From assembly GCA_965235115.1 (NCBI GenBank), contig OZ249445.1:5580001-5644000 (forward strand): a DNA stretch of 64,000 nucleotides, read 5' to 3'. Position numbers and translations under genes: made by a program. Positions 13,908 to 63,732 of this stretch are shown here, one piece after another. Position 1 is the first letter of the stretch, and every line of letters begins with the position of its first letter. The notes under the pieces were generated by a model. It saw nothing but the letters and a program-made list of their open reading frames with translations, was not told the origin of the DNA and ran no database searches. This DNA comes from Laetmonice hystrix (Eukaryota).

Positions 13908-13940
<33 letters not shown>

Positions 13941-15646
13941 GTTTGCTTTGTTATTGACTATGCCAGTTTCTCTTGTGTTCACAACCCCTCACCATGAACT
14001 CTCCTATTGTCTGTCCAGGTCGGTACAAGTTCTACGACAAGGTGGGAGTTCTCCGTGATGTTGTTCAGAACCACCTGATGGAACTGACGGCTTTGGTTGC
14101 CATGGACCTCCCGCACAACTCGGGAAATATCTCCGAGATTCTCGCCAAGAAACTGGAGTTGCTCCGCCAGGTGGCGCCCCTGGGCCCAGAGAGCACGCTG
14201 GTTGGTCAGTACGCAGGATACACGGATGGTCTCCAGCAGGAGTTGGAGGACCTCGACCGCTCCAGTAACACTCCAACATTCTCAGCCTCTGTGTTGTATA
14301 TCAACAATGCGCGCTGGAGAAACGTCCCCTTCATCTTGGTGAGTGGCAAGAAACTGGATGAAAAATCGAGTTACGTCCGCCTTGTATTCAAGGACAGTTT
14401 GTTTTGTATGGATAAACTCGGCAAAGAATGTCACAAACAGAAGCAGATTGTGTTTGACATCAGTAACGATGATTTATACCGACCCTCGCTAATCCTGACG
14501 TCGCCCAGCCTCCCCCAGCCTGGAGATTACCAGGGCTGGCAGAGAGAAGATCTCCGCCTGAACGTGTCTGTACACGGTGAGAACATGGCCCAGATGACAC
14601 AGCTCCTGGCCGTGTCCGAGCACGAGGCGTACGATGTGATCATCTCCGGGGTGGTGAGTGGAGAGAGACATCTGTTTACTCCCATGGATGGTCTCATGGC
14701 CGCCTGGAACCTGTGGACGCCCGTACTGGAGGACGCTGTACGCCGCCAACCACGGCTCTATCAGGGCAGGGACGTGGACCCCTCATGGCTGTCCTTCCAG
14801 GTGAAGGGTCGTACGCTGGAGTACGTCCACGCCGACCTGGATGAGGAGTTGACGGCGGGGGCGGCCGGGGCTGTGCCAAGGGTGGCCCAGGTGCCAGGAG
14901 TCCTCCTGGGCCGGCCGCTGGTATCGGGCGATGTCCAGGAGGTTGTGTCCCGCCTGGCTGAGGATATGTACCGGGCCGCCCTGGAGGCGGTGGCTGAGAG
15001 GGGAGCCTTTCACGTGGCCTTCTCCGGGGGACACGGTCCGGGGGAGCTGTTCAAGCACCTCACTCAATCCTATCAAACCTTGTTTCCATGGCAACACACG
15101 CACGTCTGGCAGGTCGACGAACGGTGTGTGAACGCCGACAGCGTCCATTCAAACTTCGGCGTCCTGGAGCGTGACCTGCTGGAGCACGTACACCTCGCGC
15201 ACTCCCACGTACACCCCATGCCGGTCCTCCTACAGGGCGAACCCTGCCAGCAGGAGGACGATGGTGCTGCCATCTATGAGTGGAGTATCCGGAGGGGTGT
15301 AGCAGGAGGGCGGCTGGATTTCACCCTGCTGGGGGTAGGTATGGATGGTCACACGGCCTCACTGTTTGCAGGCCAGCCCAGCCTCCACGAACGGGAGAGA
15401 CTGGTGGTGTATACCGACGGGGGACCTCCAACCACTGCCACCCGGAGAATAACTCTCACCTGGCCGGCCATCAACACCTCCAGGCGGGTCGGGGTCCTCG
15501 TCCTGGGCCGTGGGAAACACGACATCCTCTCCAAGGTCACCTCGGACAGTGGTCACACCCTGGACGAGTACCCCATCCTGGGCGTGGCGCCCTCCAACGG
15601 GACGCTCACGTTCTACGTGGACCATAACGCCCTGATCGGGGACTAG
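4464..15646 (+). CDS. H6PD: Hexose-6-phosphate dehydrogenase / GDH-6PGL endoplasmic bifunctional protein, 3 coding exons, 813 aa
   Basis: Exons 4464..5185, 5520..5611, 14019..15646 (GT-AG, phases 2/1, 2442 nt). N-terminal signal peptide, NADP-binding GATGDLA, G6PD active-site RVDHYLGK, RDVVQNHL, and a C-terminal 6-phosphogluconolactonase domain (FSGG, WQVDERCV, LLGVGMDGHTASLF). Acceptor at 4450 implies an upstream non-coding exon. Confidence 0.96.
7147..7195 (-). ncRNA. Minimal type I hammerhead ribozyme motif (Penelope-like element type)
   Basis: Minus strand reads CAGTTCCT-CTGATGA-GTCC-AAACTGAG-GGAC-GAAA-CGCGCG-TC-AGGCTG: both conserved cores, 4-bp stem II, palindromic stem III (ACGCGCGT), GUC cleavage triplet, stem I CCT/AGG. 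Confidence 0.75.
9065..9440. repeat. ~33-bp minisatellite, about 11 copies, in H6PD intron
   Basis: Unit approximately AGTAGTATATGGAAAGAGGC(C/T)AAAGT(C/T)ACA(C/G)TA; explains spurious ORFs 8983-9490. Confidence 0.9.
13398..13427 (+). repeat. (GGGGGT)5 tract, potential G-quadruplex
   Basis: Five G5 runs separated by single T on the H6PD sense strand, in the intron. Confidence 0.8.
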
Positions 15647-23972: not shown

Positions 23973-24479
23973 CCTACCCCTCCCAGTGGGGGTATTATTC
24001 GGCACCCACGCCCAAAGTTAACTTCTATTTAGACTTTTGTCGTTCGTCTTTTTAATTGGGTCCTCGATGACTGAGTTGACCCCCGGGGGTAGGACCGAAT
24101 TACCTTGTGATGATATAGTACTGTGGTAGTCTATTCACAGACAGCCTGCTCTGTGTATCATTAACAACTTGGTGTTGAGACCGTATGCTATGTGAATGGT
24201 TGCAGTAATCCGGGGCCGGGGTCGACTTCAGTACGGTGCTGTAAATCTTTTACTTTCGGGACATTCTTAAAGTTACGATGGTATCCGTGCGCAGTGGAAA
24301 CAGAGTCCTTTATCTATAGTTGATAAAAAATAATTTCCTCTACTGGTGGACATGTAGAAAGATCATCAATCTGTACAGAAGGGTGTCCGTGATGTTGAAT
24401 ATAGATATTGGTATACGCGTCACGTTAAAGGGGCCTGAGTTCGTTGGCCAGGTGATGCCACTACTCATCACCTCCCATC

Positions 24480-24900
24480 TTACACCCCAAGCCCTCTCAA
24501 CACACCAGGCCTGTCAACACCCCAACCCGCTCAACACACCAGCCCTCTCAACCCGCTCAACCCACCCAACCTTCTCAACACCCCAACCCTCTCAACACAC
24601 CCAGCCATCTCAACACCTCTACCCGCTCAACACACCCAACCTTCTCAACACCCCAACCCTCTCAACACACCCAGCCATCTCAACACACACAACCTTCTCA
24701 ACACCCCAACCCTCTCAACACACCCAGCCATCTCAACACACCCAGCCATCTCAACACCCGAACCTTTTCAACACCCCAACCCTCTCAACACACCCAGCCA
24801 TCCCAACACAGGCCTCAACACCCCAGCCATCTCAACACACCAAACCCTCTCACCACCCGAACCCTCTCACCCCCAGGCCAAGCCCTCTCAACACCCTAAC
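24480..24900. repeat. Degenerate C/A-rich minisatellite
   Basis: Repeats of CTCAACAC(A)CCC(C)A(A/G)CC; explains ORF 24320-24946. Confidence 0.85.
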
Positions 24901-27900
24901 GTCGCCCACGTCGTGGTGCTCCCGGTCATCAGACGTCATCAGTTAGCCAGAAGTTGCGGCCGTGACGGCTGGTTGCTGGCTGGCCCCAGGCCGCAGTGCC
25001 GGGGTGGGGGTGAAGTATAGTGGGGTGAGCGGGAGTGGGGCCCTCTAAACGTGCCCTGTCTGAGTGCTGACCGGATGTGGTCGAGCCGGGCTCCTTCTCA
25101 CCGGAACCGGTAGGAGCACGCACTCGGGTCACGTGACTCGGGAGTGTGGTTGTGCGAGGACATGGAGACCGCTGGGTCGTCCCTATTTCACAGTCGGATC
25201 ACGTGACAGTTGATTTGAAGGAGAGCTAGAAATAACAAACGATGACAAGTTATTGTGGGTCGCGACCCGGGGGAGAGCTTGACCAACAGTCTTTTTTAAC
25301 GAACCTTACACAAAGTTAGTTTGTATGTCAGAAAACCAAATACATGGGAACACGTTTCTATGAGAAGTCCTTGGTTAGACGCTGACTATCACGTGTCGAT
25401 TGGAGGTCATTGATCTCACGAGCACAAACTTTCTTATGTGATTCATACCTCCCAAATCACCAGGAGTTGGGTTACGAGACGTACTTGGTGATCATTTATA
25501 GCCCTGATGATCGCCGTCCTCAGGAGAGCGTGGAGGGGAGGGTAGAGGATAACATTGTCTTCATCTACCAGCTCACTCTACTCTCTGCCACCCGCCGTGG
25601 GCCCCATTCACCGGGCTGAGGACTTCATCAGACGGAGGGTTTACACCCACACGGACACCCATCCTCACACCCAACAACCCCCCCCCCCCCCCACACACAC
25701 ACACCCCACACCCACGCACAACACCCCCACACACGTGCGCGACAAGCTGACCAGCACGCGACGAATGTCGAGCGACATATCGAATATCGTCAATATTGGT
25801 TCTAACTTTAGAGGCGCCGATTACACAGTATTTTGCCCAGAATTTATTCAGAAAGGTCATGAACATTTTAACGAACACTGCAACGTTCGTATCAGGTTTC
25901 ATATTCTCCTTTAGTTATTGCTTTCTGGTGACCTGCCGCTCTCTCTTACAGGTTCTTTACATGAACGTGTGAGTGTCGCAATGCTGGCGAAGATTACTTC
26001 ACGTTTCATTTTGTTATCATGTTGAATCTGCTCGCATACGTAGACGTAATGTAATCTTGACAGCGGAGAACACGCTGTGGACCAACACCTGCAACTAGAC
26101 TGATTGTAATGGCGCTGGGTTACCGTCCAGGCAATGCTAGTATATTTAAAGAAGTTGAATTGTTTATACTGAGCGACTCGTTACCTTGTCTGCAAACACT
26201 CCGTCATTGTTTGACGGATCATGTTGTAATGGACACCGTCCAAATTATCAGGTCGGAGAGGGAAGTCGGTTCATCTCTGTCTCTGACCACAGGGGCGGAT
26301 CCAGGTTGGTACAGAAAAACCTTCCACCGAGAGTGGAAGCAACCTCCCTACCCCTCTGGATCCGCGCCTGCACTCAATGGCACCGATATTGCTTTTAGAA
26401 ACATGAACTTGGATCCAATAATCTAGGTGGTCGCTGTGGCAGGTGTCCACCGGTAAATGGGACGAATGTCTAACTATAAGGAGTCAGTCCCGCTGTGGAC
26501 TAACAACCTCAGATATACTGAAAAAAGGCTGCCGGAATCAAGTCGATTTTACACTGATGTCGTATTGGACATTGCACGTTTACGTACGAGTTTTTATACA
26601 CAAAACAGTCCAAGTGATTTTCCACAGTTTCTGTTGGCACAAAACATCTTTTCCCTTTTCCTTGATTCTGCTTATGTTTCGGTTGTTCCGCATCACACAG
26701 AAACACCTCCCCCCTGGAAGGTGGGTTGAAAGCTGTGAATATTGGTGCACCCACGCAGGTGGGTGCGCCTATATATGTGAATATTGGTGCACCCACGCAG
26801 GTGGGTGCGCCTATATGTGAATATTGGTTTTCACGATGGAAATTAGAAAGTGCCCCGGATATAGGCGCTATCCGGGTATAGGCGCATGCTCACTTATAGG
26901 CGCATGCGCCTAAAAGTGCGTCAATACTGTAGGTGTGTGTGTGAACCTGACTTTAAATAAATAACCATATTATCTTCTTTTACAGTTTGAGGAACGTTTA
27001 AATTCATTAGATCTATAGATACCATGTTTAGTTCTTCCAATCAAATTGAGATGTAACCACGGGGAGGAGGGTGTGCCCCTGAGAACACCCCCCCCCCCGG
27101 CCCCGACCACACTGGAAGGGTATTTCCGTAACATGGCCTCCCGACAGGGGGGGCTATACCTTGATGGTTGACGTCAGTCGAGCGGTCGCAGGGCTCAAGT
27201 CGCCAGATGGCCGTGACGTCATAAAATAAACGACAAAAAATACCAACTCGAACCCTAGACCTTACTTTATTTAGTTCCAACAGAATCTGATGTACATACA
27301 CCAGGTGGTGTTCGGTTGAGCTCATTATAGGTATTACAATGTCATCATTGTTATGGATGAGACATGTGCATCTATAATAATTGGTCAATGCATGTTTACG
27401 AAGAGTTGTCCCAGTATTTGGTTTCACTAGACTGCTGCTATAGGATACGTTTAGTATAACAGTCTAAGTGCACTGTACAGGGGTGTCGGAAGCTATCGAT
27501 AGTTGAGGGGACCTGAAGTCAGGAGCCGTCCATCTCTGCCCTATGCGTTGAAAGGGGCGGGTCTAGTATGGGGGTGGGGGCATGCACCCCTGACCCCCCT
27601 TTCCAACAGCCCTACTGTAGACTATATCTATCAATCATCGAGGAAATACAATCTTTCAATTATTGTTGCCGCGATGTGCAGGAATCGGCAGAATTATATT
27701 TTGTTGATACTAGCATTCGTGAAAAACAGATCCCCTCTTCTTTCAGCCTGTTTGAAAAGGTAAATGTTAACAAAAAAGTCAATGCTGGAGGTCTATTTCT
27801 GGATATATATATACTCGTCATGAGAGTTGTTTTTGAAAACGCGTCACATACTAGTAACAAATCATTTGAGATTCTGCCAGGCAGCAGCGTACGTGTATAC

Positions 27901-36128: not shown

Positions 36129-37440
36129 TTTTGTAGTCAACCCGTCTACATGTCTCGCTTAGCAAGACTTCTACTTCTTCATCTTCTTCGTGATCTACGT
36201 CATCATCGTCGGCATAATCTCCTTCTTCTATTCCCCTTTCTTCTATTTATACGTATGTATGTATGTATGTATGTATGTATGTATGTATGCATCCATTGTG
36301 TCGTACGTGTGCTACGTTTGTATAGAGTGGCCCTACTCAGTGCGTGTTAGTAAATACACGTACACATGTATTAACTTTGTATTAAAGAGGAATTTCGGGA
36401 TAAAGTAAAAAAAACAATTTCTTTTGCTGTTCTTGTTAAGTGGTCTTTCATTGAAATTGATTGATAAACAAAGGACACAAGATTATCGCCAGAAATAAGC
36501 ATTTCTGAACAAGCCCCATTAGACTCAGAATCGTACTTTCTTGTCGTCATCACGTCATAGGCATGTTGTTCTGACCGTGTGTTTTCTATTTAATATGCTG
36601 GTGTGCAGTCGTCTGTTACCCCATTTGTCAAGGTAAACATTTATATTTAGGGTCGCTTTACAATTGTCGGATAGGAGAAAAGCCAATCTGTGTTCCGTGA
36701 AGTATAAAGTTCGTGTGGGTCCCGTTTTTATCATGGACCGTCTCTGTTTGTTGGATGATCTGACTCACCCACATGATTCGCAATCAATTCCAGTCAGATG
36801 GCTCAATCCAGGGGCGGATCCAAGATTATGGAAATGGGAGGGGGAGAAGGAGGGGTGTTAGATCATGAATGGAGGGGTGGGCATACCTTCTAAGGTACGC
36901 TGCGATTTGGGGGACATTTCTCTCAAATTCAGCACGTCATCTGGGGGTCGTGGCCGGGGATAAACGATCCACCAAAGCAATCCGTAAGGATAACCTCGAT
37001 TTTAACAATGCCAACTTGAACCAGGACGACGGTTAGCGCAGTAACGGACGCCATGCGGCAAGGCTGGCTTACTTTATTCACTGTTTGAAAGGGCATCCCG
37101 AGAGACTGTACAATTCTACTATCAGTCTTCCTCAAAAACTCACTACTGTGAAATAGTGGTTGTCAGCCTGTCTACTGATCTGTAGCCATGATTCGTTTTG
37201 ACGGTTTTCCCGGGAGGGGAATGATTTAAACTAGGAGTGTTAGTCCAGGGACCTCAACCTCCGGGTTATACGGTAGATCGGAATGCTGGCTATAGCCATG
37301 ACTTGTCAGACTGCCCCCTCCAGGGTCCACGAGTCATGACCGTAGTAGTGGGCTGTAGTTAGGGAATGGCGTCGGGGTAGTTGACTGGGGGCGGAGGGCA
37401 AACACCAAAAGACAAGGTGATCGCATTTAAGTAAAAGAAC

Positions 37441-37446
37441 TTTATT
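37441..37446 (-). terminator. Probable polyadenylation signal of the secreted-peptide gene
   Basis: AATAAA on the minus strand ~575 nt after the stop at 38021. Confidence 0.5.
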
Positions 37447-38020
37447 TGGCTTGGTCTCTGTCTGCGCAGTCAAGGCACCAGGTGGCGCCCCAGGGGTGTG
37501 GCCGACGACACGGGGAGGCCGGGGCCGCCTTATCTGGGTGGAGCACTCCTAGCTCGGTCCAACGGAAACGGATGGCGGCAGCGACGGTGGTGGCGATAAC
37601 GTCAATGGAGGGACACCGTCATAGACTGACGTCACTGGCTGACGTCACAAGTCACGTGATTGGCGGTGGCGGAATGTGATAACAAAGGCCACGGCACCGT
37701 GCCCCAGGCTCAACAATATAACTTTGACATGAAATGGCAGGTTCGCCAGGGACTGTTTTACTGGTAGAGGCAGTTGGTGGTGAACAGCAGGCTCCTTCAG
37801 GTATTGAAATGTGAGGGTGGGAAGGTATTCACCTCGGTAGGGTTAGGGATAACATCGAGAAAGTCTCCTCCGAATACAGTGAACGGATTGGGTAACGTAC
37901 GAGAACTTCCGGTGTCTGCGGTCACGTGGCGGTCACGTGATAAACATGTGATCACAGGTTCTCCGACGGTCAGCGTTTGTCGTTTGTGAGGAACGCCCGC
38001 TCGTACCGTGAGGGACGCTC

Positions 38021-41000
38021 TCACTTCCAGCCGTGTTTACTCATAACGTTTTCGGCAAATTGAAGGAAGTGAAGGGCACACTGTTTGCGTCGTGAGCCCA
38101 TATCCTGGAGACACTCGTACTCCGCATCTGGTGAGACGCTGCCGCAGTAACCACACACGACGGCCGTGAACTCAGTGTCAGTCGTCGAGGGCGATCTCTT
38201 GTGAGCCGGCAGGTCGCTCCTCCTGCAAACAGTCACGTGACATCCGGTTAACACTTAACCAAGGGCAAGAGGAGTGGGTATTGTGTCACGGCAGGGCATG
38301 GGGCCAGAGCAAGCGTGGAATTACAAATGTAGCTCAGTCCTCTCTGTATATTACATGACATTTAGCCTAGGTTACCTAGATACTGTCAAGAACATTCGTC
38401 CCTGTATTCATTAGATGTAGCATTATGCATATAAAAATATATTATCATTTCGCGGAATACTTCATGGTAAGCAAACAAGAATACATAATGGAGACATTAA
38501 CTTTCAACTAATTAGAGGAGTTTTGGACATGGTTATGAAGTTAAATATCATCATGAACTGGTATGATAAAATGCCTTCTAAGGTGAAGGGAGGGGGGATG
38601 TGAGGACTATAATATATACATGCATACGGTATCACGTGCATTCACAATCATGCATATCAAAATGTAACAACACACAATTTTATATCTTTAGAGAACAATC
38701 ACGCCTGGGCCTAGTTCGTGCTTAAGCTTAACGCTTCTGATTGGCTGGTCCAAGCAGATCAGTCAATCAGAAGTCTTAAGCTTAAGCTTAGTAACATTTT
38801 AAGTTTTTTAGGAACTAGGCCCTGCAGTCAGATTTGCCGTATACTCTGATCATGTATTTGGCAGTATGGATTATGGGTGACGTGAAGGGCAGCCCGGGGG
38901 CGTACAACTGACCCAGTTACACCCTAGTGGCCCACAGGTGCTGGTTTTTCAAATTTCACGAACGCGCTAAGATATTTTGAGACTCGATATTTTGGCTGGT
39001 TACTACAGAGACCCGGGAGGATTGAGAGTAGAAGACAAGTATGTCTGTCGTGTCCCTGGACCGGTTATGTTGGTGACGGGTTGCGAAGGTCACCTTGGTT
39101 TACTCATTCAAGTCGGACTTGTGTGTCCCACTGAACTAGTGATGAATAATAATAAAGATCATGGTTTATTTATAAACATGGGTCCGGGCTGGCGAATGGA
39201 CTAGCGATCACTGGTGCTGGACGCGAGTCAAAGGCCTGTGTCCACTTGAGCGGTATGCCGCGCGTCTTAACGCCGCGTGATACGCACAGTGAAACACGCG
39301 GCGGAATACGCGGCGGCGATGCGTGTCCACTTTGGCGTGAAATTGCGGGCGCATACGGTCACTGATCATCATATCTTATCATATAAGCTTGGGTTTTCTC
39401 CACCTCTGTGATCAGATGCTCAGTTGTTCGGTCGTCCGCCTTTCGAGACATCTTGGTGAATGGCCAGGTGCAATTCAGTGCCAACTCTTCACAAAACACG
39501 CGGCGTGATCCGCGCAATAAATAGATTTTCTTTACCGAGCGTATCACGCGGCGGTGGGAGTGCGTGTTTTTTTGCCGCCACGCTTAGACTCCTGCATTGG
39601 AATCTGTTGTTCTTTTACTAGGCGTTTTACCGCCGCGTATCACGCGGCGTTATGACGCGCGGCACACCGCTCAAGTGGACACAGGCCTTTAAAAGCCCAG
39701 GTGGTCAGGCGTGACCTTGAAACCCTCACCCCTGTGCTTACATCGGGGACCGCTGTAATGAGGGGGGACATTATCACGTCTGTTTGAGTGAGGATATAGG
39801 TGGACGTACTTGTCATCCAGAGTATTATATAATAGATACAGTTGAGACTAACGTCATGTTATATAGAAGATAATTAACAATTAAATGAAATGAGAGGGAT
39901 TAGACCTACGGATTGAGTCACCGAAAGAGAGAGAGAGAGAGAGAGAGATTCAGAGAGAGAGAGCCAGATAGAGAGCCAGAGTTAGAGCCAGAGAGAGGCA
40001 TAGGAGAGAGAGCCAGAGAGATAAAGAGAGAGAGAAAGAGAGAGAGAGACGGAGAGAGAGACACAGAGACAGAGAGTGGGTGGATGTGTTGGGGAAGGTT
40101 GTCCGTACACTCGAGTAATCATTGCGGATTGTATCGTCCGTCCTCCCCGTACCTGATTAACTCCGATAATCAGACAATAAGTTTCTCCTGCTGAGATTGT
40201 CACGTCATTTAGAACATGGGTCATCCCCCCCCCCCCCCCCCCCCGTAGGATGGAGTACATACGGTTCTAATATCATCGAAAGGATCGCAATCAGTTTCAA
40301 AGTTTCTCGCATAATTCCGCAAGTCTGATAATAATCTAGTTGTGCTTAAGTCAAGAGGAATCTTTTCATCGACCCAGGGATACTACCACCCGCCACTCGA
40401 ACCTCCTTGTCGGAGTCCCCTATAGACCAGTGGAGCAAGGCGACTTGTATAATCTAGGGGGCGTCTCTACTGATGGAATTGTATTAAAACATAACAATTA
40501 CATTAATGAAAAAACTATTGGTGCTAGAACGCGTCAACGACGCTTGTGAATCTAAACATTAAGTGGGTGAAAATGATGGAACAGGTTTGTTTGGTGAATA
40601 CGGGGTGGGTTCCACGTGTATGTCCAGATGTTATAAAGGATATGAGGATGAAGGATAACGGTAAGATAGGTGTCGTCACAGGATGATGCACGTGTGAGCA
40701 GGTCGTAATGGATGACTGTTCAGAAAGCCAGGGTGTGGAGTTGTTCAACAATCTATGCTACAGATCTGAAGGGGGAGAGTGGGGGTGGGTGGTTCCGTGG
40801 AGAGTTCGGCAGACCGAGAGGTTGTTAGCGTGGCCAGCAGTCAGCTCGCCGTTACGGCCAGCATGACGGCTCGCCGTCCCGGTCGGTTCAGGTGGTAGGA
40901 AATCGGTGGTAGGCGGAACAAGGCGTGTTGAGGACGGTGGTCACACATGGGTGGATGGATGTCTAGGGTGTGACGGGGTGGGAGGCTGACCTGGCCCTGA

Positions 41001-41543
41001 CATTCACACACAGCCCGGCAGACTGGCCCCGGGGCCTGGGGAGAGGAACTCGGCAGGGTATATCACACCGACTGATCTCTATGTCAGCGGGGGAACAATA
41101 AAACAATTTTGAAATCCGAGTCTGCTCAGGTGGATACCACACAGGATCGACACGGAGCTACACGTCAAGTCTGATCGATCATGTCAAAAGTTGTTAAATC
41201 GAAAAGATGATTTAGTATACGACGCGAGGGAATGAGGCAATCGGCGAATATACCCTTACAGTGGCGCCCCCTATAGGCCGGGAGGGGGCGCAGTCAGCCG
41301 GGGCTGTGGCTGCGGTCCGGGCCATTTTGTTACGACGTACATTTGCTGCCTTTTTACGTTCCTCCTGCCTAAATATGGCAGCCACCAACCAGAACTGCGC
41401 TGTGGCATCTGTCTACGGGCGGCTGGAGCTTGAAGACGGAGTACTAACCCATTTCTGAAGAAATCTGGTGGGAGGGAAGACGCTGTACGCAGTAGAGCCA
41501 GGAGGACCACCGTCAAAACGCTCAGTATAATTCCACGATGCAT
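38021..41543 (-). CDS. Putative neuropeptide precursor, 98 aa, 2 coding exons, family unassigned
   Basis: Exons complement(41449..41543, 38021..38222). Strong acceptor TTTTATCTTTCAG directly before the ATG; donor GTTAGT; acceptor CTGTTTGCAG; phase 2+1 joins in frame. Product MHRGIILSVLTVVLLALLRTASS-LPPDFFRN-G-R-SDLPAH-KR-SPSTTDTEFTAVVCGYCGSVSPDAEYECLQDMGSRRKQCALHFLQFAENVMSKHGWK. Confidence 0.8.
38708..38821. mobile_element. Small PIF/Harbinger-type MITE, 114 bp, in the peptide-gene intron
   Basis: TIR GGCCTAGTTC / GAACTAGGCC, 3-bp duplication CTG (38705-38707, 38822-38824); internal inverted CTTCTGATTG arms. Confidence 0.65.
39231..39689. mobile_element. Internally deleted Harbinger-type element with MADF (Myb/SANT-like) remnant
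   Basis: ~55-bp TIR AAGGCCTGTGTCCACTTGAGCGGT...GATACGC (2 mismatches), flanks TCA/TAA; minus-strand ATG 39451 encodes MSRKADDRTTEHLITEVEK and, with a 1-nt frameshift, NPSLYDK. Confidence 0.7.
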
Positions 41544-44500
41544 CTGAAAGATAAAACCACCAGGCTTGTGTGAATGATTCAGTAGTTATCAGAGGCAGGC
41601 CCCTTAATGTAATTGCACTGACATGATTTCGGAGAGCTGTTTTATTCTGGTCTTTGAGGGAGAATTTGTAAAGAATGCATTAATAGTTATTATGGTGCTC
41701 TTCCCCTTGTGAACAGCACAGAAACACCAATTGAATAGCGAGCAGGTATTAGGTTTTCAGTCTCTAAAAAGGTTATTCAAAACAACAAATTCTACTCCCT
41801 TTGTTGAATCAAATAACACAATCATATTGGAAATAATTTACTAATAAATCTCCTGTTCACATCAAGGAAGAGTTTCATGGTTAGGTTATAGAGAATTGCG
41901 CGACACGTTGAACATGTGCCCCGGATACACAATATAGAGTGAAGCGTAGGCCTTAAAGGTGCTATTCGTCTCGCACAGAATGGCATTTCTCCTATCATAC
42001 ATTGTGCACATAGTACTAGAAACAATTCCTACCGATACCATTGGCCTGATAAACCTTCTATTAGTTTGTGTGCAGCATTTGAAACCTATCTCGGTGCGCA
42101 CCGAGATAGAGCCATTTCCTATGGTGGGGCGTGTCAGGGTCTCTACAGGCCTTCTGAGAGAGCCCCATTTGTGCCGTTATCCATGAAAAATTTTGATTTC
42201 CTTTGTTGTGAATCTATTTCCATGATAGGTGGGATCACATAAACGTCAACAAAATTAAAAATAAAAAAATTGAATTTTTGTTCACGAATAGTACCTTTAA
42301 GATGTGCGGTTTTTGTGTCGACAGAATGTTTATCTGAAACACTTTCTGATCGCAATTGTCCTCTCCTTGTGGGCCACGCCTCGTTCTGGGAGCCAGAGCC
42401 CGCTTTGATCCCATTGTTTGGGTTTCCCCGGCCTGGAACCTGAGGGGGATACATTAATTTGCCCTCTCAGACACAAGGTAGCAATAGCTTTAAGTTGTCA
42501 GATCCAGTTATCTGATGAGCTAGGTTCACCTCGTACCAGCACTGCATGAAAGGCGGGGCGCCCTTGAGTGCTGAAGGTGCGAGGCGAACATACGCGGGGT
42601 GGCTTGGGGCCTCTCCCCCAGAAAAAAATTGAATTTAGAAAAAACGCTTTTTCTCGGCATCTGGAGATGGAGATTGTGAAGTTTATCAAAGCATTTAAGC
42701 CTAGCCTACCAATAACTTTTGTCACTTGCAGAATCCACCTGCGTGCATGGCAGTAGAGAGATATTTGGATCCACTACCATTTTTCTCGCTGGCTCTCCCC
42801 AGTGTTCGGCAATGGGTCATCAAAGGCTGTGATATGTTCAACTGTGTGTCACAAAGCAGGCCCGTACCCGGGGGGGGGGGGGGGGGTCCAGGGGTTTCGG
42901 AACCCCCCCCCCCCCCCGGGAGGGAGGGGGCCTCGCACCTGAGGGTACCCAGGCTCAGGCTGCGGCTGTAGGCCCCACGAACTGAATACAAAAGATGGAC
43001 CCCCCCTAAGGCCAATCCTGGGTACGGGCCTGCAAAGTATATAAAAAAGAAACGTGTCATTTTTATCCTAAGCTTCCCCCCCGGGGGGGGGGGGGGCTCG
43101 GTGGTACAATAGGTACAATGATTGAATAAGCTTGAAGACGTTCATGGCAAAAGCTTAATCTTCTCTCATGTCAAACTCTGTGCTATTTTGTACTCCTAAA
43201 ACGCCATCATATTTAGCACTTCTCAGGCGAAATCTCCCTGTACACTTCTCAACGAGTCTTCTCGTCTTGGTGTGCAGTACATGTATTATAATGCGGTTCA
43301 ACTCCGAGCGTTGGAGGATGTCTTGGACCAGGAAAGTTGTAGGTTCTTTGTCTCTCTATATGTCTCTACATATTATGACATCATAAAACACGCACAGAAT
43401 GCACCAACTGACGCATACATCCACATACTCGCTAAAGTAAGTTCCATGGAATGCAAATATTAATGTGCATTATAGGCAGAATAGACTAATCTTATTACAA
43501 AGGCTGTACATCTTAAAACATTGACATACACATCTTACGGTTCCTTTACATATTTCTGTACACACTTTCATTGTATTGTGGACAGACTTCATCTCCGCGA
43601 ACAGCTAAGGCTTTGTTCCTGATAATTATTTTTGCAGAAGAATACAGATATAATATTATTGTAACCGATAGCTTATAGAAAACTGCAGAATCGTAAACAC
43701 CCGTGGACATTTTTTGGAGTCGATCTTTCTGTATTTTAAGAGTCGAATCATCTTTCTTTTTCCCACATAGAACTTTCTGAATTGACCATGCTGAAACACC
43801 TCGACGTTCATACTATCTGGTACAATCTTCAAGTTGATATCTCAGATAGTCCTTATATGAGACCAAAATTGAAATTTTGTCTCAAAATTGGTGTTCCAGA
43901 CTTAGTTGTAATAACAGGTGGTCAATTAGACACCCTTTTAGTTTTGATCTCATACCTTCTCGGAAGATTGAGACGTAGGGGCTTTAAAAATATTTTACGT
44001 TAAAACTCTTTTTTTTTATGGCCACCCTATATATACACTTGTACTTTACAAAAAAGAATTTTAAGGAAAAGGTATAAAGATAGTTGTGATAAGTGTTCCG
44101 AGATGTTGCTTAGTGATTATTAAATGGTGGTTATACATGTCGAGCACCAGGTAAGCCACTCTCCATGTGTGTAATTTAGCCAAAGTAATTTAGCTGTAGG
44201 CCTAAGCAGAGCCCGCAATTGGATCTGCTTATGGCTTTGCATGAGGAGGTTTGGAGGAATGAACGCCTGCTCACAGACGCGTCGTCTGCTCTGCGAGGTC
44301 ACGTGATCCGTGCGACTCACGTGACGGGCCGAGATGTCCGACGTGATCGGTGTCGGAAGATGACGTTTGTTTCTACAGCAGGGGAACGTAAACTTTCAGA
44401 CCTGACCTGGCAACTCTCTGCTAATGGATATCCTTTCAATCAGCGCCGAGTCTATTCATGGCAGCGTCTGACAGCGGCTGTCAATATATGCTTGGCTTAT

Positions 44501-56581: not shown

Positions 56582-59500
56582 TTATAATTTAGAGGGATAC
56601 ATACTTGGCATCAAAGATTCTTCATCTGCAGACTGGTCGCCGATGAGGCCAAGTTTATGGAGCTGTTGTCGGTCAGGGCTGGACAGTGGCTGCCATGGCG
56701 ACTTCTCACTGCAACAACCAGACTGAGGTGCTGCCACCTGGTAGTTATCACACGAAGTACTGTCACCAGTCGTTGCAGGGGTATCCTTCATGAGAACTGC
56801 CTTTGCCCGTCTGACGACTAGACTCTCTTCCAACTTCTCAGGTGATGTTGACCCAGAGTTGGCCCTGCAAGTGGTTTTACATGAGCCATATAAATTGTAT
56901 TCACCATTTTCATGAAACCCTGAGGTAACCGTTTCATGCCTAACGCCATCCTTATAATCAACTCTAGTGGCGAATACATTGGTTTGAATGACAGGTTGTG
57001 AGGTGTCACTCATGTCTCCGTCCACACTGTTGTCACGGTAACCAGACATGGGCAGCAGGTTCCCAAACTGATTGGTTAGGTTGGTATTCAACCAGGCATC
57101 CGGATTGGTCATTTGGAGGCTGTTTGTGTTGTATCCTGTATCCTGATTGGTCAGCTGGAGACTGGTTGTGTTATACCCTGTATCCTGATTGGTCAGCTGG
57201 AGACCCGTGGTGTTATATCCTGTGTCCTGATTGGTCAGTTGGAGGCTGGCCGTATTGTAACCGGCATCCTCTGGATAGATGACCTGTGTACTGTGAGCCA
57301 GGTGATGGGCAGAATCTGGCGGCTCACAGCTGTCCTCTATCTCAGAGTCAGTCAGATTGGAGAGACTGAACCCATCAATATGGCTGCCATTGTTGTCACC
57401 CATGCCTGCCCCACTCCTGCTGCCGAGCAGGAAACTCATACTCCGATCAGTCTCCATGTCTTTCTGAACGATGACTGGATCTAAGTCGAATGCTTTGGGT
57501 GATTCACACGCGCTGAGCTCAGGAGGGGCTGGCAACTTGAATGGTGTTGGTTTGGACCGGCGAGTTCTCCTGCTGTAGGATGCTGCAAGAAAAACAATGC
57601 TTTCGTTTCAGTCCTCCCATGAAATACTAGCCAGGCTGTATGTCTACATCTGTTATTGAAGCCACAACCCCGATTCTGGAGTTATCCACCCAGAAAAACA
57701 TGAGCTCAACAGTCTGAGCTTCATATCTCAGAGAACTCGGAACGGTTTTATTAGAGAAAAATTCACCTACAGAACAGAACAATGAAATATGATAATCATG
57801 AAGAGGCAGTGTCAAATTAAACCTCGAAATTTATCAGCTCTATGTTGCCGATCATGTTTTCCCCTAATTTCTAGCCTAGGCCAGTATTCTAAATGAGGAA
57901 GACTATCAGATTTACCTGAGGTACACTGGTCGAGGGGACTGAGGTCGAGACGTATGGGTGACACTCCGGGACTGTTGAATGGCAGGCTAGGATGACCAGA
58001 AGAAGGCGTTGCTTGGAGAGGCAGACATAACGGAGTTGTGTCACTACTACTCTTGGTGTCTGGGAAGAAAGTAGACGAAATCCATACTGTTTACATTCCC
58101 GTACATGCATGGTAACATGATAGAATAATTTCTGGATGTTTATCCAATCTGGAATTTAGCAAACTAAAATAAGCAATGCCGCAGTAGCCTAAGGATGCCT
58201 GGCCAACAGCCAAAGATCCCAGCATGAGATGTACCTCTATGACTGGAACTGTTGGTAACACAGGGGGTTTTGGCTGTTGTGATGGGGGAGAGTTCTGGCG
58301 AGGCCATCAGTTCTGGGCCTGTAGAACACCGTCTGAGGCTTGGGGTAGCAGCACCGTGAGCACTGCCCGAGTTGATCGGGCTAGAGGAGAACAACTGACC
58401 ACGGAGGGTAAAACTATCAACAGTCTGAACTTCACATCTCACAAAAACAAAGTCCCAGTAAAGGCAGCTATCTGTAAATGTTACCTATATTTTGTTTCTA
58501 CAGAATAATGAGATATGATAGTCATGAATTTCACTACAGAACAGCAAAAGACTCTGAACGGTATTATTAGAGAGAAAAGTTGGTTTTGAACTCACAGAAC
58601 TGGGCGTGTGATGTTGTGACTGAGTTGTCAGTTCTGGTGTGACACAGCGACTCACTGTCCTCGGCTCACCGACTGCCATAGATGACTTCTTCCTACTCAT
58701 GCCACAACTGGGATGTAGAGAAAAAACACTTGCACACTGCATCCAGATATATCCACCTGACAATTTTTCTAAGTTTCCTTCAGAATATCTCAATAACTTT
58801 GAACTGGAGCCATTCTCAGTCCAGGCAAGCAAGTAATTACTCGCCTAAACTTCAATTTGTACCTTTAGGCAACCATTTTTCTGAAGACCTGCAGAGAGTT
58901 TTAATACTTGCCAATAAGTCAACCAATAAGGTGAGGTTCATTGTTGTAAGCCAGCATGGATTTGATTGGACGTACCTCTGTACTCATTAATTAGTTCCCG
59001 ACCACCAGAAACACAAGCCAAGGGAACCAGCTGGTAGGTGGTCAGTGAGCAAATTGAACTGGCCTCGAGAGAAGGGGGTAACTCCAGAGGAAGTCAGTTA
59101 GGCGTGCAAATTATTAACAAATCTTATTGGTAGGGGTGCAGTCTTTTGCATGCCTTGGCACAATTTTAGGTGCGCTATGGCACGCAAGTGCAGTTGCGCA
59201 CCACAAAAAAAGAGCCCTGCATTCTCATTGCTTTGAGAATTTGTTCCAATAGTCAGTGTTTAGTATTGTCAACTTACTGCACTGGGCTTGGAGGCGAGTC
59301 ATCTTCCCCATGAAAGAATAACTTGCGGCGTAGAGAAGAGGTGCTTAAAATATCTGTGCTTCCATCATCTTTGGTTGAGTGTGTGTAATACTGACCTATA
59401 ACGGGCAGCATCAAATTTACTCACACTTTTTGTTGTCATCAAACTCACTCAGTGAACCTTTTTTTAAACAAGTAACTGTTCCTTTGTACTTTCTATAGCT

Positions 59501-61491
59501 CAATTAAAGCATTTATTACCATTTTAGAATATATTTTCTTCAAAACACAAGACTCATTACACAAGACAAATGGTGCGCTCACTTAGAATCTTGTAGAGGT
59601 CAAAGGTTACTGGCAAGGTCAGGGTCGTCTGACATCCCACTGGTAATGTGAACACAAAGATACGAATGACAACAACCAACAGTGAAACCCTGCCAAGAGA
59701 ATATTAGGCATGGACTCTCAGCAACAATAAACTTACAAACCGACTTATGTTAGGAGACAAATTTATAACAATTACTAGTGTGAGATACTATAAGTTCATG
59801 TATCACTGTTGTAATACTGTAAGCTCCATTTGTAGTCCACTGCAAAAACTGCTGACTGATTTCTTATTCTTTTCCATATCCTCAACTTATAACGATTTAC
59901 GAACAGAATATTAAATTTGGTGCACCTTAAAATTAGCTTCTTTACATGTTTGCCTCAAATCCACAGGCCATACTTCTCAATGTAAATAATATTATCATGT
60001 CCTCACCATCTTTTTTACCCTCCTCTGACTCACGGTCACTGCTGGAACTCTCTTCCTCCTTTGGCACAACTGTCCGATAATCTAGATGGTAACAAGTATT
60101 CAATAACAACTACTGCACTCAAATCAAACTCCACGATTAAATGTCTCTCTATAAACCGATACCCCAGGTCTCTAAACCCCAGATCTTGACACAGCCACTT
60201 AAAGCTGGGGGAGGGTGAAAAATTTAATTGTATGTGGTTGACACTGTGAGTAGTGTGATGGTGCCTCACCTGTCATGGAGGGTGTCGAGGGAGGGCACAG
60301 AACCCGCTTTGGTTTACCCTCCTCGGACCATGGAGACATGCCAACAAGATTCTTGGAGAAGAATTCATCAATTGCTCTCTGGGCTCGCTCTTCGATCTCT
60401 TTGTCTCTGTAATTGGAAATGGAAGCAAGATCAGTTAATGCAAAAACCTGGTCTCTGAACTCTGCATAAATTGATGAATCGTGCCTGTTATTTCCTCTGT
60501 AACCCATTCTCAGTAGATACCAATAGAAATTTAACCTTTCTGGCTGATACAATCTGTATGACTTACCTGTTGACACCAACTGGTTGACTTGGCATTTCAT
60601 CAATGTCAGCAGGTTTCATCATTGCTATGTGATCAATGGACCAGAATGGACTGCCAGCCTGAACAACCATGAACAATAGGTGAGAAATATACCACAATCT
60701 GTCTTCATACATACTGTGCTTTCAACAAATCCTCACATGATTTGTCACTTTATGCGAGAATAGATTTACAAATATGAATGCTGTATGGTGGCCTGGCCTG
60801 GCAGGACTCCAAAACATATCTACCACCTTCACTTGCCCCTTGGGCAAGCAGCAGCCACAAGCCACTTGCCTGACAGTATTTCACTTGCCACAAAATACTC
60901 GTCCAAAGACATATTTTAGTTATGATTTCAGATGATCGGAAAGTGTTTTTTTTAGCCCTGCTCTGCATAGATCTGTCTTGATGCGGACTGATATAAAATC
61001 AAACAAAGCATCAGATAACTCACGTGGTCCTTTTGAACTGGATGCCTGCCACTGAACACTCCAGGACTGAATACACAGCCCGTCATTGCCTCAGGCTCCA
61101 ACTCAAAAGGGTTGTATAGGGCGCCCCGTGGAGTTCGAAATGCTGAACCCCTCGGAGTCCAACTTGCATCACTGCGAACTCCACATGATCCCCCATTGCC
61201 AGGGGTGGCTGGACTCTGACCATGTGCAGTACCACGGGGCGTGACCCCCTGACCTCCAACCAGTCTTCGGTGAGGAGAAATCTGCATCATGTGAGGGCTC
61301 TGTAAGTTCTTGTTCACCAACTGGAGATGTTGTGGTCGAGATCTGGGTGTGTGATGGAGCTGGCTGTTAAAGTGGAGATTTCTCGCTGGCATATCGTTGA
61401 AATTGTCCCCTCCAGACGGTGGCGAAGGGATCGTCTCCATCGTCAGGCGACTCCTTGCGCTTTCCTCACTTTCTGGTGTCAACATTATCAT
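56582..61491 (-). CDS. BORA: Protein aurora borealis, 10 coding exons, ~787 aa
   Basis: Exons complement(61024..61491, 60567..60658, 60270..60406, 60007..60081, 59583..59639, 59278..59395, 58596..58707, 58235..58394, 57916..58059, 56582..57582), all GT-AG and phase-consistent (2364 nt). Bora motifs: NPFE, FWSIDHIAMMKPADID, RAQRAIDEFFSK..SPW, GCQTTLTLPVTFDL, SSLRRKLF, FSSSPI, D(T/A)GYNT. The exact start codon and two splice sites are uncertain. Confidence 0.9.
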
Positions 61492-62083
61492 TCCTTGCTT
61501 AATTCAACACCCACCTCTGAAGAAACAATAGTGTACGGTACAAATATTTGTGAAAAATGGCCTGACCCAGTTTTAAAAATATTTCTTATTTGAAAAAAAC
61601 TCCAAAAATGCAAGATTCATTTCTATGTAAATAACAAATAAAAAAAACCACCTCGAACCCCCTTCCCTGATTTTGCTGTGCAGGGTTTCTTGCAGGCCCT
61701 TTTTTTGGGGGGGGACTCCCCCCCCCCCATTATTTAGCTACTCCCCCCCCCCACACACACAAAAATTCCAGGGGGAAATATTTTGCATTACTCTCCGAGT
61801 CTGCCCCCCCCCCCCCCCCAAAAAAAAAAACTCGCAGCATCCCCCCCCCCCCCTCCCTCCCTCCAGGAAAGCCTGCTGCGGAAAAATTATTAATTTTTAT
61901 ATAATAAAGGATTATAAAGCTAATTTAGTGGGTCTGGTGTACTGTGCCCAGTGTGGGGCAGGCGGCCCGATCGCGGCCTGGCACCCAGACGGTCGCCCGC
62001 CCGACCGACCCGCGGCCGACCGGGACCGACCCGGGCTCGGTCCGTCGGTTTAGTAGCGGGGCCAGGCCGCGAGGGATGCTCAC

Positions 62084-62507
62084 CCGTCCATCCTCTACAT
62101 TACGCTGTTTATTGGGCATATATATTAAACTTTATTCTACAGTGGACGAAATCAAACATCCGTGGTAACGTGTCTCACCTTCTACGTTCGTAAATCTTCT
62201 GGCATCGCTTGTACTTTAGCACAATCAACTAGTAAAACACTGATAATGTTCGTGTCCGGGCATGCAAACCTGCCGTGTTGCCCGGTTCAAATTTACCTCC
62301 TTTTCAAATGGACCTATGGAGGGACCGCAGAAACCCCACTCTGTTTAAAACTCTTTTACGTCCTTATTAACATGCAACAAAATACTGTTTTAGGTCTAAA
62401 TGCCTCAAGTATTATCTTAGATCACGAAATTATGATATATGTTAATTAATAACCATTATTATAAAGATTTGATTTTCGCGCAACTTTTGGTGCAGTACTT
62501 TTTCAAA
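62084..62507. promoter_or_regulatory. Bidirectional promoter region of BORA and MZT1
   Basis: Between a BORA exon-1 donor candidate (GTGAGC, exon end 62084) and the MZT1 ATG (62508); E2F-like TTTTCGCGC at 62473-62481 and CHR-like TTCAAA/TTTGAA at 62286, 62303 and 62502 (short motifs, could be chance). Confidence 0.6.
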
Positions 62508-63732
62508 ATGGGCGACAATAACAGTGGGAAAACCTCGACGGCGAGAGAAACTATGGAGGGTGAGTAAAGTCAAGCTCAGTTTGAGTGTATATTTGCGGTC
62601 CTGTTAGTAAATACCTTCTTATATGTATGGTGTTAATTTCAAGGTCCTACATTTAAAGCTAGTTTCACAAATCGCCACTGACTACTCGTGATGAGGAATG
62701 GCTGGGCGATAATACAGTGTTTTACGGGCGGGCCACTGTCACTGGGTGTCAAGAAGAATACTAGTGCCGTAGTGGGTTCCCTACTACATCATTAAAAGGA
62801 AGTAATGAGTTTGATTTGGGAAGTAGTGTTACAGGTAACAAGGTGCTGAAATGCTGGATGTCTGCCCACGGCTATGTTTGTGTCGGGCTGTTGGCATCCA
62901 AGAACACATATTTAGTAAAAAATGCTAGTAATAATGGTTGCATAGTGATGGGATTGTTCTTAATTAATAAATCTTTCAGGGGGCAGAACCATGTAAAGTG
63001 AATGGTACATACTGACTGGGACAATGGTTCATTCTGACCTGGACAGTGGTTCATTCCGACGTACATTTTGACAGCGGTACACTCTGACCATAATTCTGAC
63101 TAATTACTGTACGGTATCCCAACAAACTGCTTAAGTTGGGGTTAAGCCTAGGGTCAGTTTTAACTTTTATTTAAGTATCAAATTGGGTGTTAATTGGATA
63201 GTAGCATTATCCAATAGGATTGAAATTTAATGGTCACATGAACCTGCCAAATGTTCACTAAACATACACTACCGGTACCTTATCATTCAGCCTTGGTCGA
63301 GATCTCCAAGTTATTGAACACTGGCCTGGATGCTGAGACACTGGCGGTATGTGTGCGGCTTTGTGAGAATGGTGTCAACCCTGAGGCATTGGCCCTAGTA
63401 ATTCAGGAACTGAGGCGGGAAACTGCTGCCTTGCAGGTAAACGGTTTGACAGCAAACAATGCTGTGGATACTCAAGCTACTGTACAGCTCTGCCTAGTTT
63501 CCATTTTCTTCATCCTTTGATTCTTAACGGTGGCATTCAATCATTTGAAACATGATTTAATGAGGTCTGAATGCATTTTTTTTTTTTGACAATTAAAAAA
63601 TCCAGTAAATGTTGAGAGAAGTACGATCTACACATTGAACTGATGCATGGTACTACCCTTAAGACATTTTTAACTAACAAATTTTCTCTCTTTGATTTGC
63701 AGGCTGTGGAGAATGAAGATGAGAAGGCATGA
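62508..63732 (+). CDS. MZT1: Mitotic-spindle organizing protein 1 (MOZART1), 3 exons, 75 aa
   Basis: Exons 62508..62559, 63291..63436, 63703..63732 (GT-AG, phases 1/0). Product [75 protein letters not shown] matches the MOZART1 family signature. Confidence 0.95.

What the first reader, a model, noticed from the sequence alone, without database searches (positions are those of the whole stretch)
38021..41543. Hidden two-exon neuropeptide-like precursor predicted to yield LPPDFFRN-amide plus a 4-cysteine peptide
Seen: two separate ORF fragments splice (GG|G, canonical GT-AG, 3.2-kb intron) into a 98-aa protein with a hydrophobic signal (predicted A-S-S cleavage), then LPPDFFRN, Gly, Arg, a spacer SDLPAH, KR, and a domain with C-x2-C-x10-C-x10-C; an AATAAA follows at 37441. 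Established: peptide directly after the signal peptide, G+basic amidation/cleavage site, an intron at that site and a Cys-containing C-terminal associated peptide are typical of bilaterian neuropeptide precursors; X-Pro N-termini resist aminopeptidases; RN-amide ends are known from the sea anemone Antho-RNamide. Inference: an amidated octapeptide hormone of a family I cannot name, possibly undescribed. It is the only gene I found in ~40 kb between two housekeeping gene pairs.
Basis: partly seen in the sequence, partly recalled or inferred. Interest (0 to 1): 0.85.

Follow-up and report, generated by a model that had tools for sequence, protein, structure and literature searches.

The report
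Annelid sCAP neuropeptide precursor gene
This is a real, spliced and expressed gene for a small neuropeptide precursor, but not a new one: it is the annelid 'small cardioactive peptide' (sCAP, pyrokinin/neuromedin-U-type) precursor, and its product LPPDFFRN-amide was already detected by mass spectrometry in the worm Platynereis dumerilii in 2013.

Summary
On the minus strand, 41543-41449 and 38222-38021 join through a GT-AG intron of 3,226 nt into a 98-aa ORF. It has a signal peptide, then LPPDFFRN-G-R, SDLPAH-KR, and a tail with C-x2-C-x10-C-x10-C. One transcriptome-like public run of the same sample covers only the exons and holds a contig across exactly this junction.

The mitochondrial gene order shows the genome is an annelid. 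An HMMER search found a small unnamed family with the same architecture and an invariant S|[LV]PPDFFR.

The family is already described. Conzelmann et al. 2013 (PMC3890597) list a Platynereis dumerilii proneuropeptide 'sCAP' with the same layout. They detected LPPDFFRN-amide by LC-MS/MS at 1003.524 Da; I calculate 1003.5239. They place it in the pyrokinin / small cardioactive peptide / neuromedin-U group.

The suggestion of an undescribed family is not.

Residual interest:
- The 4-Cys tail is predicted to be a helical domain.
- That tail is duplicated in tandem between dibasic sites in one relative.
- The gene lies tail-to-tail about 22 kb from H6PD in two distant genomes.

Interest is low. 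The scan had no earlier finding of this on other DNA.

The parts
41449..41543 (-). First coding exon (95 nt): Met1 to Asn31 plus the first two bases of the Gly32 codon. Donor GG|GTTAGT.
   Evidence: An X4 contig lies on 41448-41545 and joins to 38221/38222.
41475..41543 (-). Signal peptide, residues 1-23 (MHRG + IILSVLTVVLLALL + RTASS); cleavage after A-S-S.
   Evidence: Kyte-Doolittle 11-residue mean peaks at 3.2 over residues 5-15. Ser at -1 and the following [LV]PPDFFR are invariant in the family. The MS-detected Platynereis peptide starts at the same Leu.
41451..41474 (-). Mature peptide LPPDFFRN (residues 24-31). It is amidated through Gly32 (41450-41449 + 38222) after cleavage at Arg33 (38219-38221; RNGR = R-x-x-R).
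   Evidence: Identical to 'LPPDFFRNam', 1003.524 Da, found by LC-MS/MS in P. dumerilii. The calculated monoisotopic mass of the amide is 1003.5239.
38223..41448 (-). Intron, 3,226 nt, GT-AG, phase 2 inside the Gly codon. It contains high-copy repeats at about 38576-38903 and 39232-39723.
   Evidence: An intron in the same phase at the same Gly is seen in L008 (TTCTTCAG|A CGA GGC = (G)RGIPFPPFKRS); L010/L011 have a phase-2 acceptor at the corresponding place, though the split residue is not known to be Gly there.
38021..38222 (-). Second coding exon, CDS part (202 nt). In order: last base of Gly32, Arg33, spacer SDLPAH (38201-38218), Lys-Arg (38195-38200), the 57-aa C-terminal domain (38024-38194), and the TGA stop (38021-38023).
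   Evidence: phmmer E = 3.1e-08 to P0001 against 1.84 billion proteins.
38024..38194 (-). C-terminal 4-Cys domain, SPSTTDTEFTAVV-C-GY-C-G..(x10)..C..(x10)..C..KHGWK. It is predicted as three helices.
   Evidence: The four Cys are invariant in 9 aligned domains. AlphaFold2 gives mean pLDDT 83.3, above 88 over the core, with helices at 13-29, 31-38 and 41-62 of the exon-2 protein. No fold match in Swiss-Prot AFDB or PDB. No Pfam family.
37441..38020 (-). 3' UTR, ending near the AATAAA at 37446-37441.
   Evidence: The X4 contig covers 37489-38157. AATAAA was located.
41544..41556 (-). Probable splice acceptor (ttttatctttcag) directly before the ATG. This implies an unlocated non-coding 5' exon upstream, at higher window coordinates.
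   Evidence: Sequence. The X4 contig has 6 letters beyond 41545 that do not lie on the genome (table 8, record 26). This is inferred, not shown.

Best explanation
The locus is the single-copy gene for the annelid sCAP (small cardioactive peptide-type) proneuropeptide, in an annelid other than Platynereis dumerilii.

Inferred processing, by analogy with the Platynereis mass spectrometry:
1. The 98-aa preproprotein enters the secretory pathway and the signal peptide is removed after Ser23.
2. A prohormone convertase cuts after Arg33 (R-N-G-R) and after Lys40-Arg41.
3. A carboxypeptidase removes the Arg.
4. Peptidylglycine alpha-amidating monooxygenase converts Gly32 into the C-terminal amide, releasing LPPDFFRN-NH2.

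The peptide is expected to act on a G-protein-coupled receptor of the pyrokinin / neuromedin-U type. That step is inferred from the literature's family assignment and has not been shown for any annelid that I could find.

The remaining 57-aa disulfide-bearing helical domain is a conserved precursor-associated peptide of unknown role.
For: - Gene structure and in-frame splice.
- Exon-only coverage and a junction-spanning contig in run X4.
- Single copy.
- Annelid host. The 16,826-bp mitochondrial contig has all genes on one strand, in the order nad1-I-K-nad3-S-nad2-cox1-N-cox2-D-(atp8)-Y-cox3-Q-nad6-cob-W-atp6-R-H-nad5-F-E-P-T-nad4L-nad4-C-G-M-rrnS-V-rrnL-L. From my own knowledge of annelid mitogenomes, this is the conserved annelid order. 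The genome has no MHC_I or ACTH domain.
- Homologues P0001, P0006, P0008 and P0009 are full length and show the same architecture, with invariant S|[LV]PPDFFR, then x-G-R-G, a basic pair, and the 4-Cys domain.
- Literature. PMC3890597 Additional files 7/8 give the P. dumerilii 'sCAP' precursor: signal peptide, LPPDFFRNGRAGDLPGAKR, then ..ACRYCG..C..C... Additional file 9 reports LPPDFFRNam at 1003.524 Da by MS; the calculated mass is 1003.5239. The main text assigns it to pyrokinin/sCAP with neuromedin U.
- Mollusc sCAP precursors in PMC8557429 share the layout: signal peptide, peptide, G-R-S, then a Cys-rich tail. Compare YLAFPRM-GRS with PPDFFRN-GRS.
Against: - The strict PRXamide motif is not met: FFRN-amide has Phe where the family has Pro.
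- The amidated residue varies among homologues (N, A, T), which is unusual for a receptor-binding C-terminus.
- The mollusc sCAP tail has 6 Cys with CC pairs, not this 4-Cys pattern.
- The published family assignment rests on short motifs (MEME), not on a receptor.
- No mass spectrometry or receptor data exist for this species.
- Run X4 is labelled '?' rather than RNA. Its RNA nature is inferred from its coverage pattern.
Confidence: 0.9

Rival explanations
1. The gene is the orthologue of the Platynereis 'sCAP' gene, but that label is wrong at depth. On this view the LPPDFFRx-amide family is an annelid (or spiralian) lineage of its own, or is related to another family, and does not signal through pyrokinin/NMU-type receptors.
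For: - There is no Pro in the 'PRX' position, and the C-terminal residue varies (N/A/T).
- The tail differs from mollusc sCAP tails: 4 Cys against 6.
- The published assignment is motif-based only.
- Mollusc sCAPs were still without functional receptor data in 2020 (PMC7749107).
- FFRNGRG also resembles the SFRNGVG start of neuropeptide S, and the C-x10-C recalls luqin precursors. Both resemblances come from my memory only.
Against: - The layout is shared with mollusc sCAP: peptide directly after the signal peptide, F-x-R-x-G-R-S, and a Cys tail.
- The RN-amide end is the same as in neuromedin U (FLFRPRN-amide).
- The MS-detected form ends at N-amide, so the 'NG' is an amidation site and not part of an NPS-like core.
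Confidence: 0.15
2. One reading: an amidated octapeptide hormone of an undescribed family.
For: - No Pfam family.
- No named protein among the database homologues.
- No hit for the peptide string in the main text of any paper.
Against: The identical peptide and its precursor are in the supplementary files of PMC3890597 (2013) under the name sCAP, and again in PMC8557429.
Confidence: 0.02
3. It is a chance ORF pair, or a non-coding transcript whose ORF is not translated.
For: The ORF is short (98 aa). Depth at the junction contig is only 3.9.
Against: - Homologues at E = 3e-08 against 1.84 billion proteins.
- Invariant Cys and PPDFFR columns.
- Conserved intron phase and position.
- The orthologue's peptide has been seen by mass spectrometry.
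Confidence: 0.01

Closest known systems
Platynereis dumerilii sCAP proneuropeptide (Conzelmann et al. 2013, BMC Genomics 14:906, PMC3890597)
   Same: - Similar length (97 against 98 aa).
- The signal peptide ends in Ser.
- Identical LPPDFFRNGR.
- A 'DLP' spacer ending in KR.
- Tail of the form A/V-C-x-Y-C-G-x10-C-x10-C, with R-R/K before the last Cys.
- The mature LPPDFFRN-amide was verified by MS.
   Different: Outside the peptide the two proteins differ at most positions (by-eye reading), so this is another species. The Platynereis tail ends ..EKHNLK and the window's ends ..SKHGWK.
Molluscan small cardioactive peptides (SCPA/SCPB; sCAP1/2, e.g. MNYLAFPRM-amide)
   Same: The first peptide follows the signal peptide directly. 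It has an aromatic-x-R-x-amide end and a G-R-S processing site, followed by a Cys-containing C-terminal domain. In slugs it is expressed in the CNS.
   Different: Molluscs have two peptide copies ending in PRM-amide. Their tail has 6 Cys including two CC pairs, with no detectable sequence similarity to the annelid tail.
Neuromedin U / insect pyrokinin-capa (PRXamide family)
   Same: The C-terminal -R-N-amide is the same as in NMU (..FLFRPRN-amide). The literature places annelid sCAP in this family.
   Different: NMU lies in the C-terminal part of a longer precursor. The Pro of PRX is absent here. Receptor pairing has not been tested.
Antho-RNamide preprohormones of sea anemones (Koch & Grimmelikhuijzen 2020, PMC7523074)
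   Same: A single copy lies directly after the signal peptide, reading F-[LF]-R-N-G-R.
   Different: - There is no LPPD extension.
- The N-terminal Phe becomes phenyllactyl.
- There is no Cys domain, and the rest of the precursor is unrelated.
- The phylum is different.
I treat this as convergence in a tetrapeptide.
Luqin/RYamide precursors
   Same: The peptide follows the signal peptide, and the tail has two Cys separated by 10 residues. The luqin spacing is from my memory only and was not checked here.
   Different: Luqins end in RF/RY/RW-amide. Platynereis has a separate luqin precursor listed beside sCAP, so this gene is not the luqin gene.

Membership tests
Annelid sCAP proneuropeptide (sensu Conzelmann 2013) | Mature peptide LPPDFFRx directly after the signal peptide, followed by Gly + Arg | tested here: met
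   Window residues 24-33 read LPPDFFRNGR, identical to the published P. dumerilii sequence. The motif is invariant in 4 further homologues.
Annelid sCAP proneuropeptide (sensu Conzelmann 2013) | Short spacer ending in a dibasic site, then a tail with C-x2-C-G ... C-x10-C | tested here: met
   SDLPAH-KR followed by C-GY-C-G-x10-C-x10-C. The four Cys are invariant in 9 aligned domains. The published sequence shows ACRYCG..C..C.
Annelid sCAP proneuropeptide (sensu Conzelmann 2013) | Host is an annelid | tested here: met
   Mitochondrial gene order and single-strand coding, read against the conserved annelid order from my own knowledge.
Annelid sCAP proneuropeptide (sensu Conzelmann 2013) | Peptide produced and amidated in vivo | not testable with these tools
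   Shown by MS only for P. dumerilii. Here there is only the transcript with the predicted splice.
PRXamide superfamily (sCAP / pyrokinin / capa / neuromedin U) | C-terminal -P-R-X-amide | tested here: not met
   The end is F-F-R-N-amide, with Phe in place of Pro. Only the R-X-amide part is kept, and it matches the RN-amide of NMU.
PRXamide superfamily (sCAP / pyrokinin / capa / neuromedin U) | Detectable sequence homology of the precursor to mollusc sCAP or NMU precursors | tested here: inconclusive
   HMMER single-sequence and profile searches returned only the annelid-type family. There is no Pfam hit. The similarity to mollusc sCAP is in layout and in the F-x-R-x-G-R-S motif only.
PRXamide superfamily (sCAP / pyrokinin / capa / neuromedin U) | Activates a pyrokinin/NMU-type GPCR | not testable with these tools
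   I found no receptor data for annelid sCAP. Mollusc sCAPs were also untested in 2020.
Antho-RNamide (Cnidaria) | F-L-R-N-G immediately after the signal peptide, in short Cys-free precursors of Actiniaria/Ceriantharia | tested here: not met
   Here four residues (LPPD) precede FFRN and are retained in the MS-detected peptide. A Cys domain is present, and the host is an annelid.

The most novel reading that the evidence does not exclude
The conserved 57-aa C-terminal domain may be more than a spacer. On this reading it is a second secreted, disulfide-stabilised helical peptide hormone, co-released with LPPDFFRN-amide.

What speaks for it:
- It is under at least as much constraint as the octapeptide's last residue.
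- It folds with high predicted confidence.
- It has no known fold relative.
- In one distant relative (P0007, L010/L011) it occurs as two tandem copies, each bracketed by KR/KRK sites, with no recognisable LPPDFFR exon within 6 kb upstream.

A linked possibility is that the 'sCAP' label hides a family that is not PRXamide-type at all.
Probability: 0.2. Interest if true: 0.45.

Novelty: already known. Interest (0 to 1): 0.15.

Why it matters
The main value is as a validation. A reader working from raw sequence alone recovered a 98-aa, intron-split neuropeptide gene and predicted its mature amidated product exactly. Gene callers often miss genes of this kind, and none of the homologues in the protein collections carries a name.

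Biologically, it adds one more annelid orthologue of a peptide known since 2013.

Three things remain open and modestly useful:
- The receptor of annelid sCAP. Finding it would test whether FFRN-amide peptides really belong with neuromedin U and pyrokinin.
- The role of the conserved 4-Cys helical domain.
- The tail-to-tail linkage with H6PD, which could serve as a positional marker for finding diverged orthologues in other spiralians.

Tried and rejected
- **Word-indexed protein search with exon 2:** no candidates. The exhaustive HMMER search was needed.
- **Full-text searches for the peptide strings** (FFRNamide, PDFFRN, PPDFF and others): only noise. The sequence occurs only in supplementary files.
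- **A 'luqin (RNamide)' mention in PMC10511097:** only an abbreviation-list entry with no sequence or data behind it (I suspect a slip for RWamide, from memory), so I did not pursue it.
- **Antho-RNamide homology:** rejected after reading the precursors.
- **Vertebrate (teleost) origin:** I considered this because of the large last H6PD exon and the BORA-MZT1 pair. I rejected it because there is no MHC_I or ACTH domain and the mitochondrial order is annelid.
- **Accession look-ups** (GCA_013332715, SRR26183964, ERZ numbers) in the paper library: nothing found.
- **NPS / NG-peptide reading (FRNG):** rejected because the MS-detected peptide ends at N-amide.
- **Luqin reading (C-x10-C):** rejected because Platynereis has a separate luqin gene.
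- **Pfam:** only sub-threshold zinc-ribbon and NDUFS5 noise.
- **Foldseek against Swiss-Prot AFDB and PDB:** no significant match.
- **Search for an upstream LPPDFFR-like exon** in L008, L010 and L011: none within about 6 kb.
- **Not done:** I did not align the published Platynereis or mollusc sequences with a tool. They have no reference id and I would not type long sequences, so those comparisons are by eye.
- **Exhausted cap:** Read laying allowed one call, so the 5' exon could not be traced.
Full report
**Observation.** I read the minus strand at the given coordinates and rebuilt the ORF in a script.
- ATG at 41543. The first coding exon runs to 41449 and ends ...TTC AGA AAT GG followed by GTTAGT.
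- The acceptor TGTTTGCAG is followed by G AGG AGC... at 38222. The stop TGA is at 38023-38021.
- In order it has: MHRG + 14 hydrophobic residues + RTASS; LPPDFFRN; G; R; SDLPAH; KR; and a 57-aa tail with C-x2-C-x10-C-x10-C.
- AATAAA lies at 37446-37441.

**Expression and splicing.** Four public runs of one sample hold the 3' exon. Laid on 37100-42000, X1-X3 cover exons and intron alike at depth 40-63, so they behave as DNA. X4 covers only 37489-38157 (one 669-nt contig, depth 26.7), 41448-41545, and repeats. A 151-nt X4 contig joins 41448/9 to 38221/2, skipping 3,226 nt whose ends read CT..AC on the plus strand, which is GT..AG for the gene. The tool labels X4's kind as '?'. Its exon-only coverage is my reason to call it transcriptome-like.

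That contig carries six more letters beyond 41545 that do not fit the genome, and the ATG is preceded by ttttatctttcag. A non-coding 5' exon further upstream is therefore likely (inference). Both coding exons are unique in the 627-Mb assembly.

**What organism.** Flanking genes:
- An isochorismatase-domain gene (467-1834, minus).
- H6PD (4281-15643, plus). Its last exon hits G6PD_C + Glucosamine_iso proteins named GDH/6PGL, at only 36-40% identity to echinoderm, brachiopod, hemichordate, mollusc, coral and vertebrate sequences.
- BORA (56585-61503, minus) and MZT1 (63242-63517, plus).

The genome has no MHC class I or ACTH domain. Contig C35 is a 16,826-bp mitochondrial genome with TGA read as Trp. 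All genes lie on one strand, in the order nad1-I-K-nad3-S-nad2-cox1-N-cox2-D-(atp8)-Y-cox3-Q-nad6-cob-W-atp6-R-H-nad5-F-E-P-T-nad4L-nad4-C-G-M-rrnS-V-rrnL-L. From my own knowledge of annelid mitogenomes (Lumbricus, Platynereis and most Pleistoannelida), this is the conserved annelid arrangement. I conclude the window comes from an annelid.

**Relatives.** The word-indexed search found nothing. phmmer against 1.84 billion representatives found eight proteins, and a profile search added one.
- Full-length members are P0001 (marine metatranscriptome mRNAs, L002-L005), P0006, P0008 and P0009.
- All read: signal peptide ending in Ser, [LV]PPDFFR, a variable residue (N/A/T), G-R-G, a short Pro-rich spacer, a basic pair, an acidic stretch, then A-C-x-[YF]-C-[GA]-x10-C-x10-C.
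- In the genomic copy L008 the intron sits in the same Gly codon in the same phase. L010/L011 have a phase-2 acceptor at the corresponding place, though the split residue is not known to be Gly there.
- None has a Pfam domain or a name.

**Identification.** Knowing the phylum, I searched the supplementary files of the Platynereis neuropeptidome paper (Conzelmann et al. 2013, PMC3890597).
- Additional files 7 and 8 list a proneuropeptide 'sCAP': signal peptide ...TVTS, LPPDFFRNGRAGDLPGAKR, then ...EEAACRYCGMYNPTLGFSCRSDIGDSRRICLGDF...
- Additional file 9 lists the peptide 'LPPDFFRNam', 1003.524 Da, identified by LC-MS/MS. I calculate 1003.5239 Da for the amide.
- Additional file 10 holds an alignment with mollusc sCAP, pleurin, insect pyrokinins and neuromedin U. 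Additional file 11 shows stage-specific expression.
- The same sequence is reused beside mollusc sCAPs in Thiel et al. 2021 (PMC8557429).
- Those mollusc precursors share the plan: signal peptide, xYLAFPRM-G-R-S, a second copy, then a Cys-rich tail.

The window's protein has the identical decapeptide LPPDFFRNGR and the same tail pattern, but differs elsewhere. It is therefore the orthologue in another annelid.

**Mechanism.**
- Shown here: the spliced transcript, the conserved architecture, and single-copy status.
- Shown in the literature for the orthologue: signal cleavage before Leu, cleavage at G-R, and amidation.
- Inferred: the same processing in this species, and action on a pyrokinin/NMU-type GPCR.

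I found no receptor data for annelid sCAP. Mollusc sCAPs were still functionally untested in 2020 (PMC7749107). The strict PRXamide motif is not met (FFRN, not xPRx), and the amidated residue varies among homologues. I therefore keep a 15% rival in which the deep family label is wrong. The RN-amide end does match neuromedin U (FLFRPRN-amide).

**The tail.** AlphaFold2 with the 9-row alignment gives mean pLDDT 83.3, above 88 in the core, with three helices. Foldseek finds nothing significant in Swiss-Prot AFDB or PDB. In P0007 (L010/L011, a low-GC genome inside a 'metagenome' assembly) the domain occurs twice in tandem, each copy bracketed by KR/KRK. That would fit release of the domain as a peptide in its own right. 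This is the basis of the novel case, at low probability.

**Synteny, noticed in passing.** On contig ctg6672l of ERZ24900295 the H6PD last exon (P0096) lies at 114,470-116,035 (minus) and P0007 at 91,731-92,123 (plus). The two genes are tail to tail, 22.3 kb apart. In the window H6PD ends at 15,643 (plus) and the sCAP gene ends at 38,021 (minus), also tail to tail, 22.4 kb apart. The two H6PD exons are only 38% identical, so the linkage is old.

**Verdict.** The 'undescribed family' reading is not supported, because the peptide has been known and MS-verified in annelids since 2013. Interest is low.

Noticed in passing
window 15643 and 38021; L011 6001-6393 and L013 10001-11566 (ERZ24900295 ctg6672l): H6PD and the sCAP-type gene lie tail to tail about 22.3-22.4 kb apart, both in the window and on a contig of a distant genome whose H6PD exon is only 38% identical. 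This looks like old microsynteny and could help find diverged orthologues.
   Followed up: partly
L010 and L011, 6001-6393: P0007 carries two tandem copies of the 4-Cys domain, each flanked by KR/KRK. It starts at a phase-2 acceptor (TTTTCAG|A CTC GAG). No LPPDFFR-like exon was found within 6 kb upstream. Two near-identical contigs carry it, probably haplotypes.
   Followed up: partly
window 38576-38903, 39232-39723, 41856-42000: These are high-copy interspersed repeats, inside the intron and just upstream of the gene. Summed contig depth runs from several thousand to about 200,000, against about 45-60 for unique sequence.
   Followed up: no
window 61503-63242: BORA (minus) and MZT1 (plus) lie head to head. 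From my memory the same neighbours occur in human 13q21-22, so this may be a conserved bidirectional pair.
   Followed up: no
window 24320-25017: All three plus-strand frames stay open for 150-208 aa over a Pro/Ser/Thr/Gln/His-rich repeat (..PSQHTQPSQH.., ..LNTPTLSTHPAIST..). It looks like a minisatellite rather than a gene.
   Followed up: no
G000 contig C35 (L015 1-2100): The mitochondrial control region holds about four tandem copies of a ~512-bp unit; identical ORF fragments start at 151, 663, 1175 and 1686.
   Followed up: no
L008 6001-6258 / P0003: The database protein P0003 reads through a TGA (..STEQQ*RHGD..), apparently because a non-standard code was used for that gene call. The real protein ends at ..WHSTEQQ, like P0006. 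The called Met is internal, and the true exon begins at (G)RGIPFPPFKRS.
   Followed up: partly
window 467-1834 (minus): Exons of an isochorismatase-domain (ISOC-like) gene lie upstream of H6PD (..[25 protein letters not shown].., ..[25 protein letters not shown]..).
   Followed up: no
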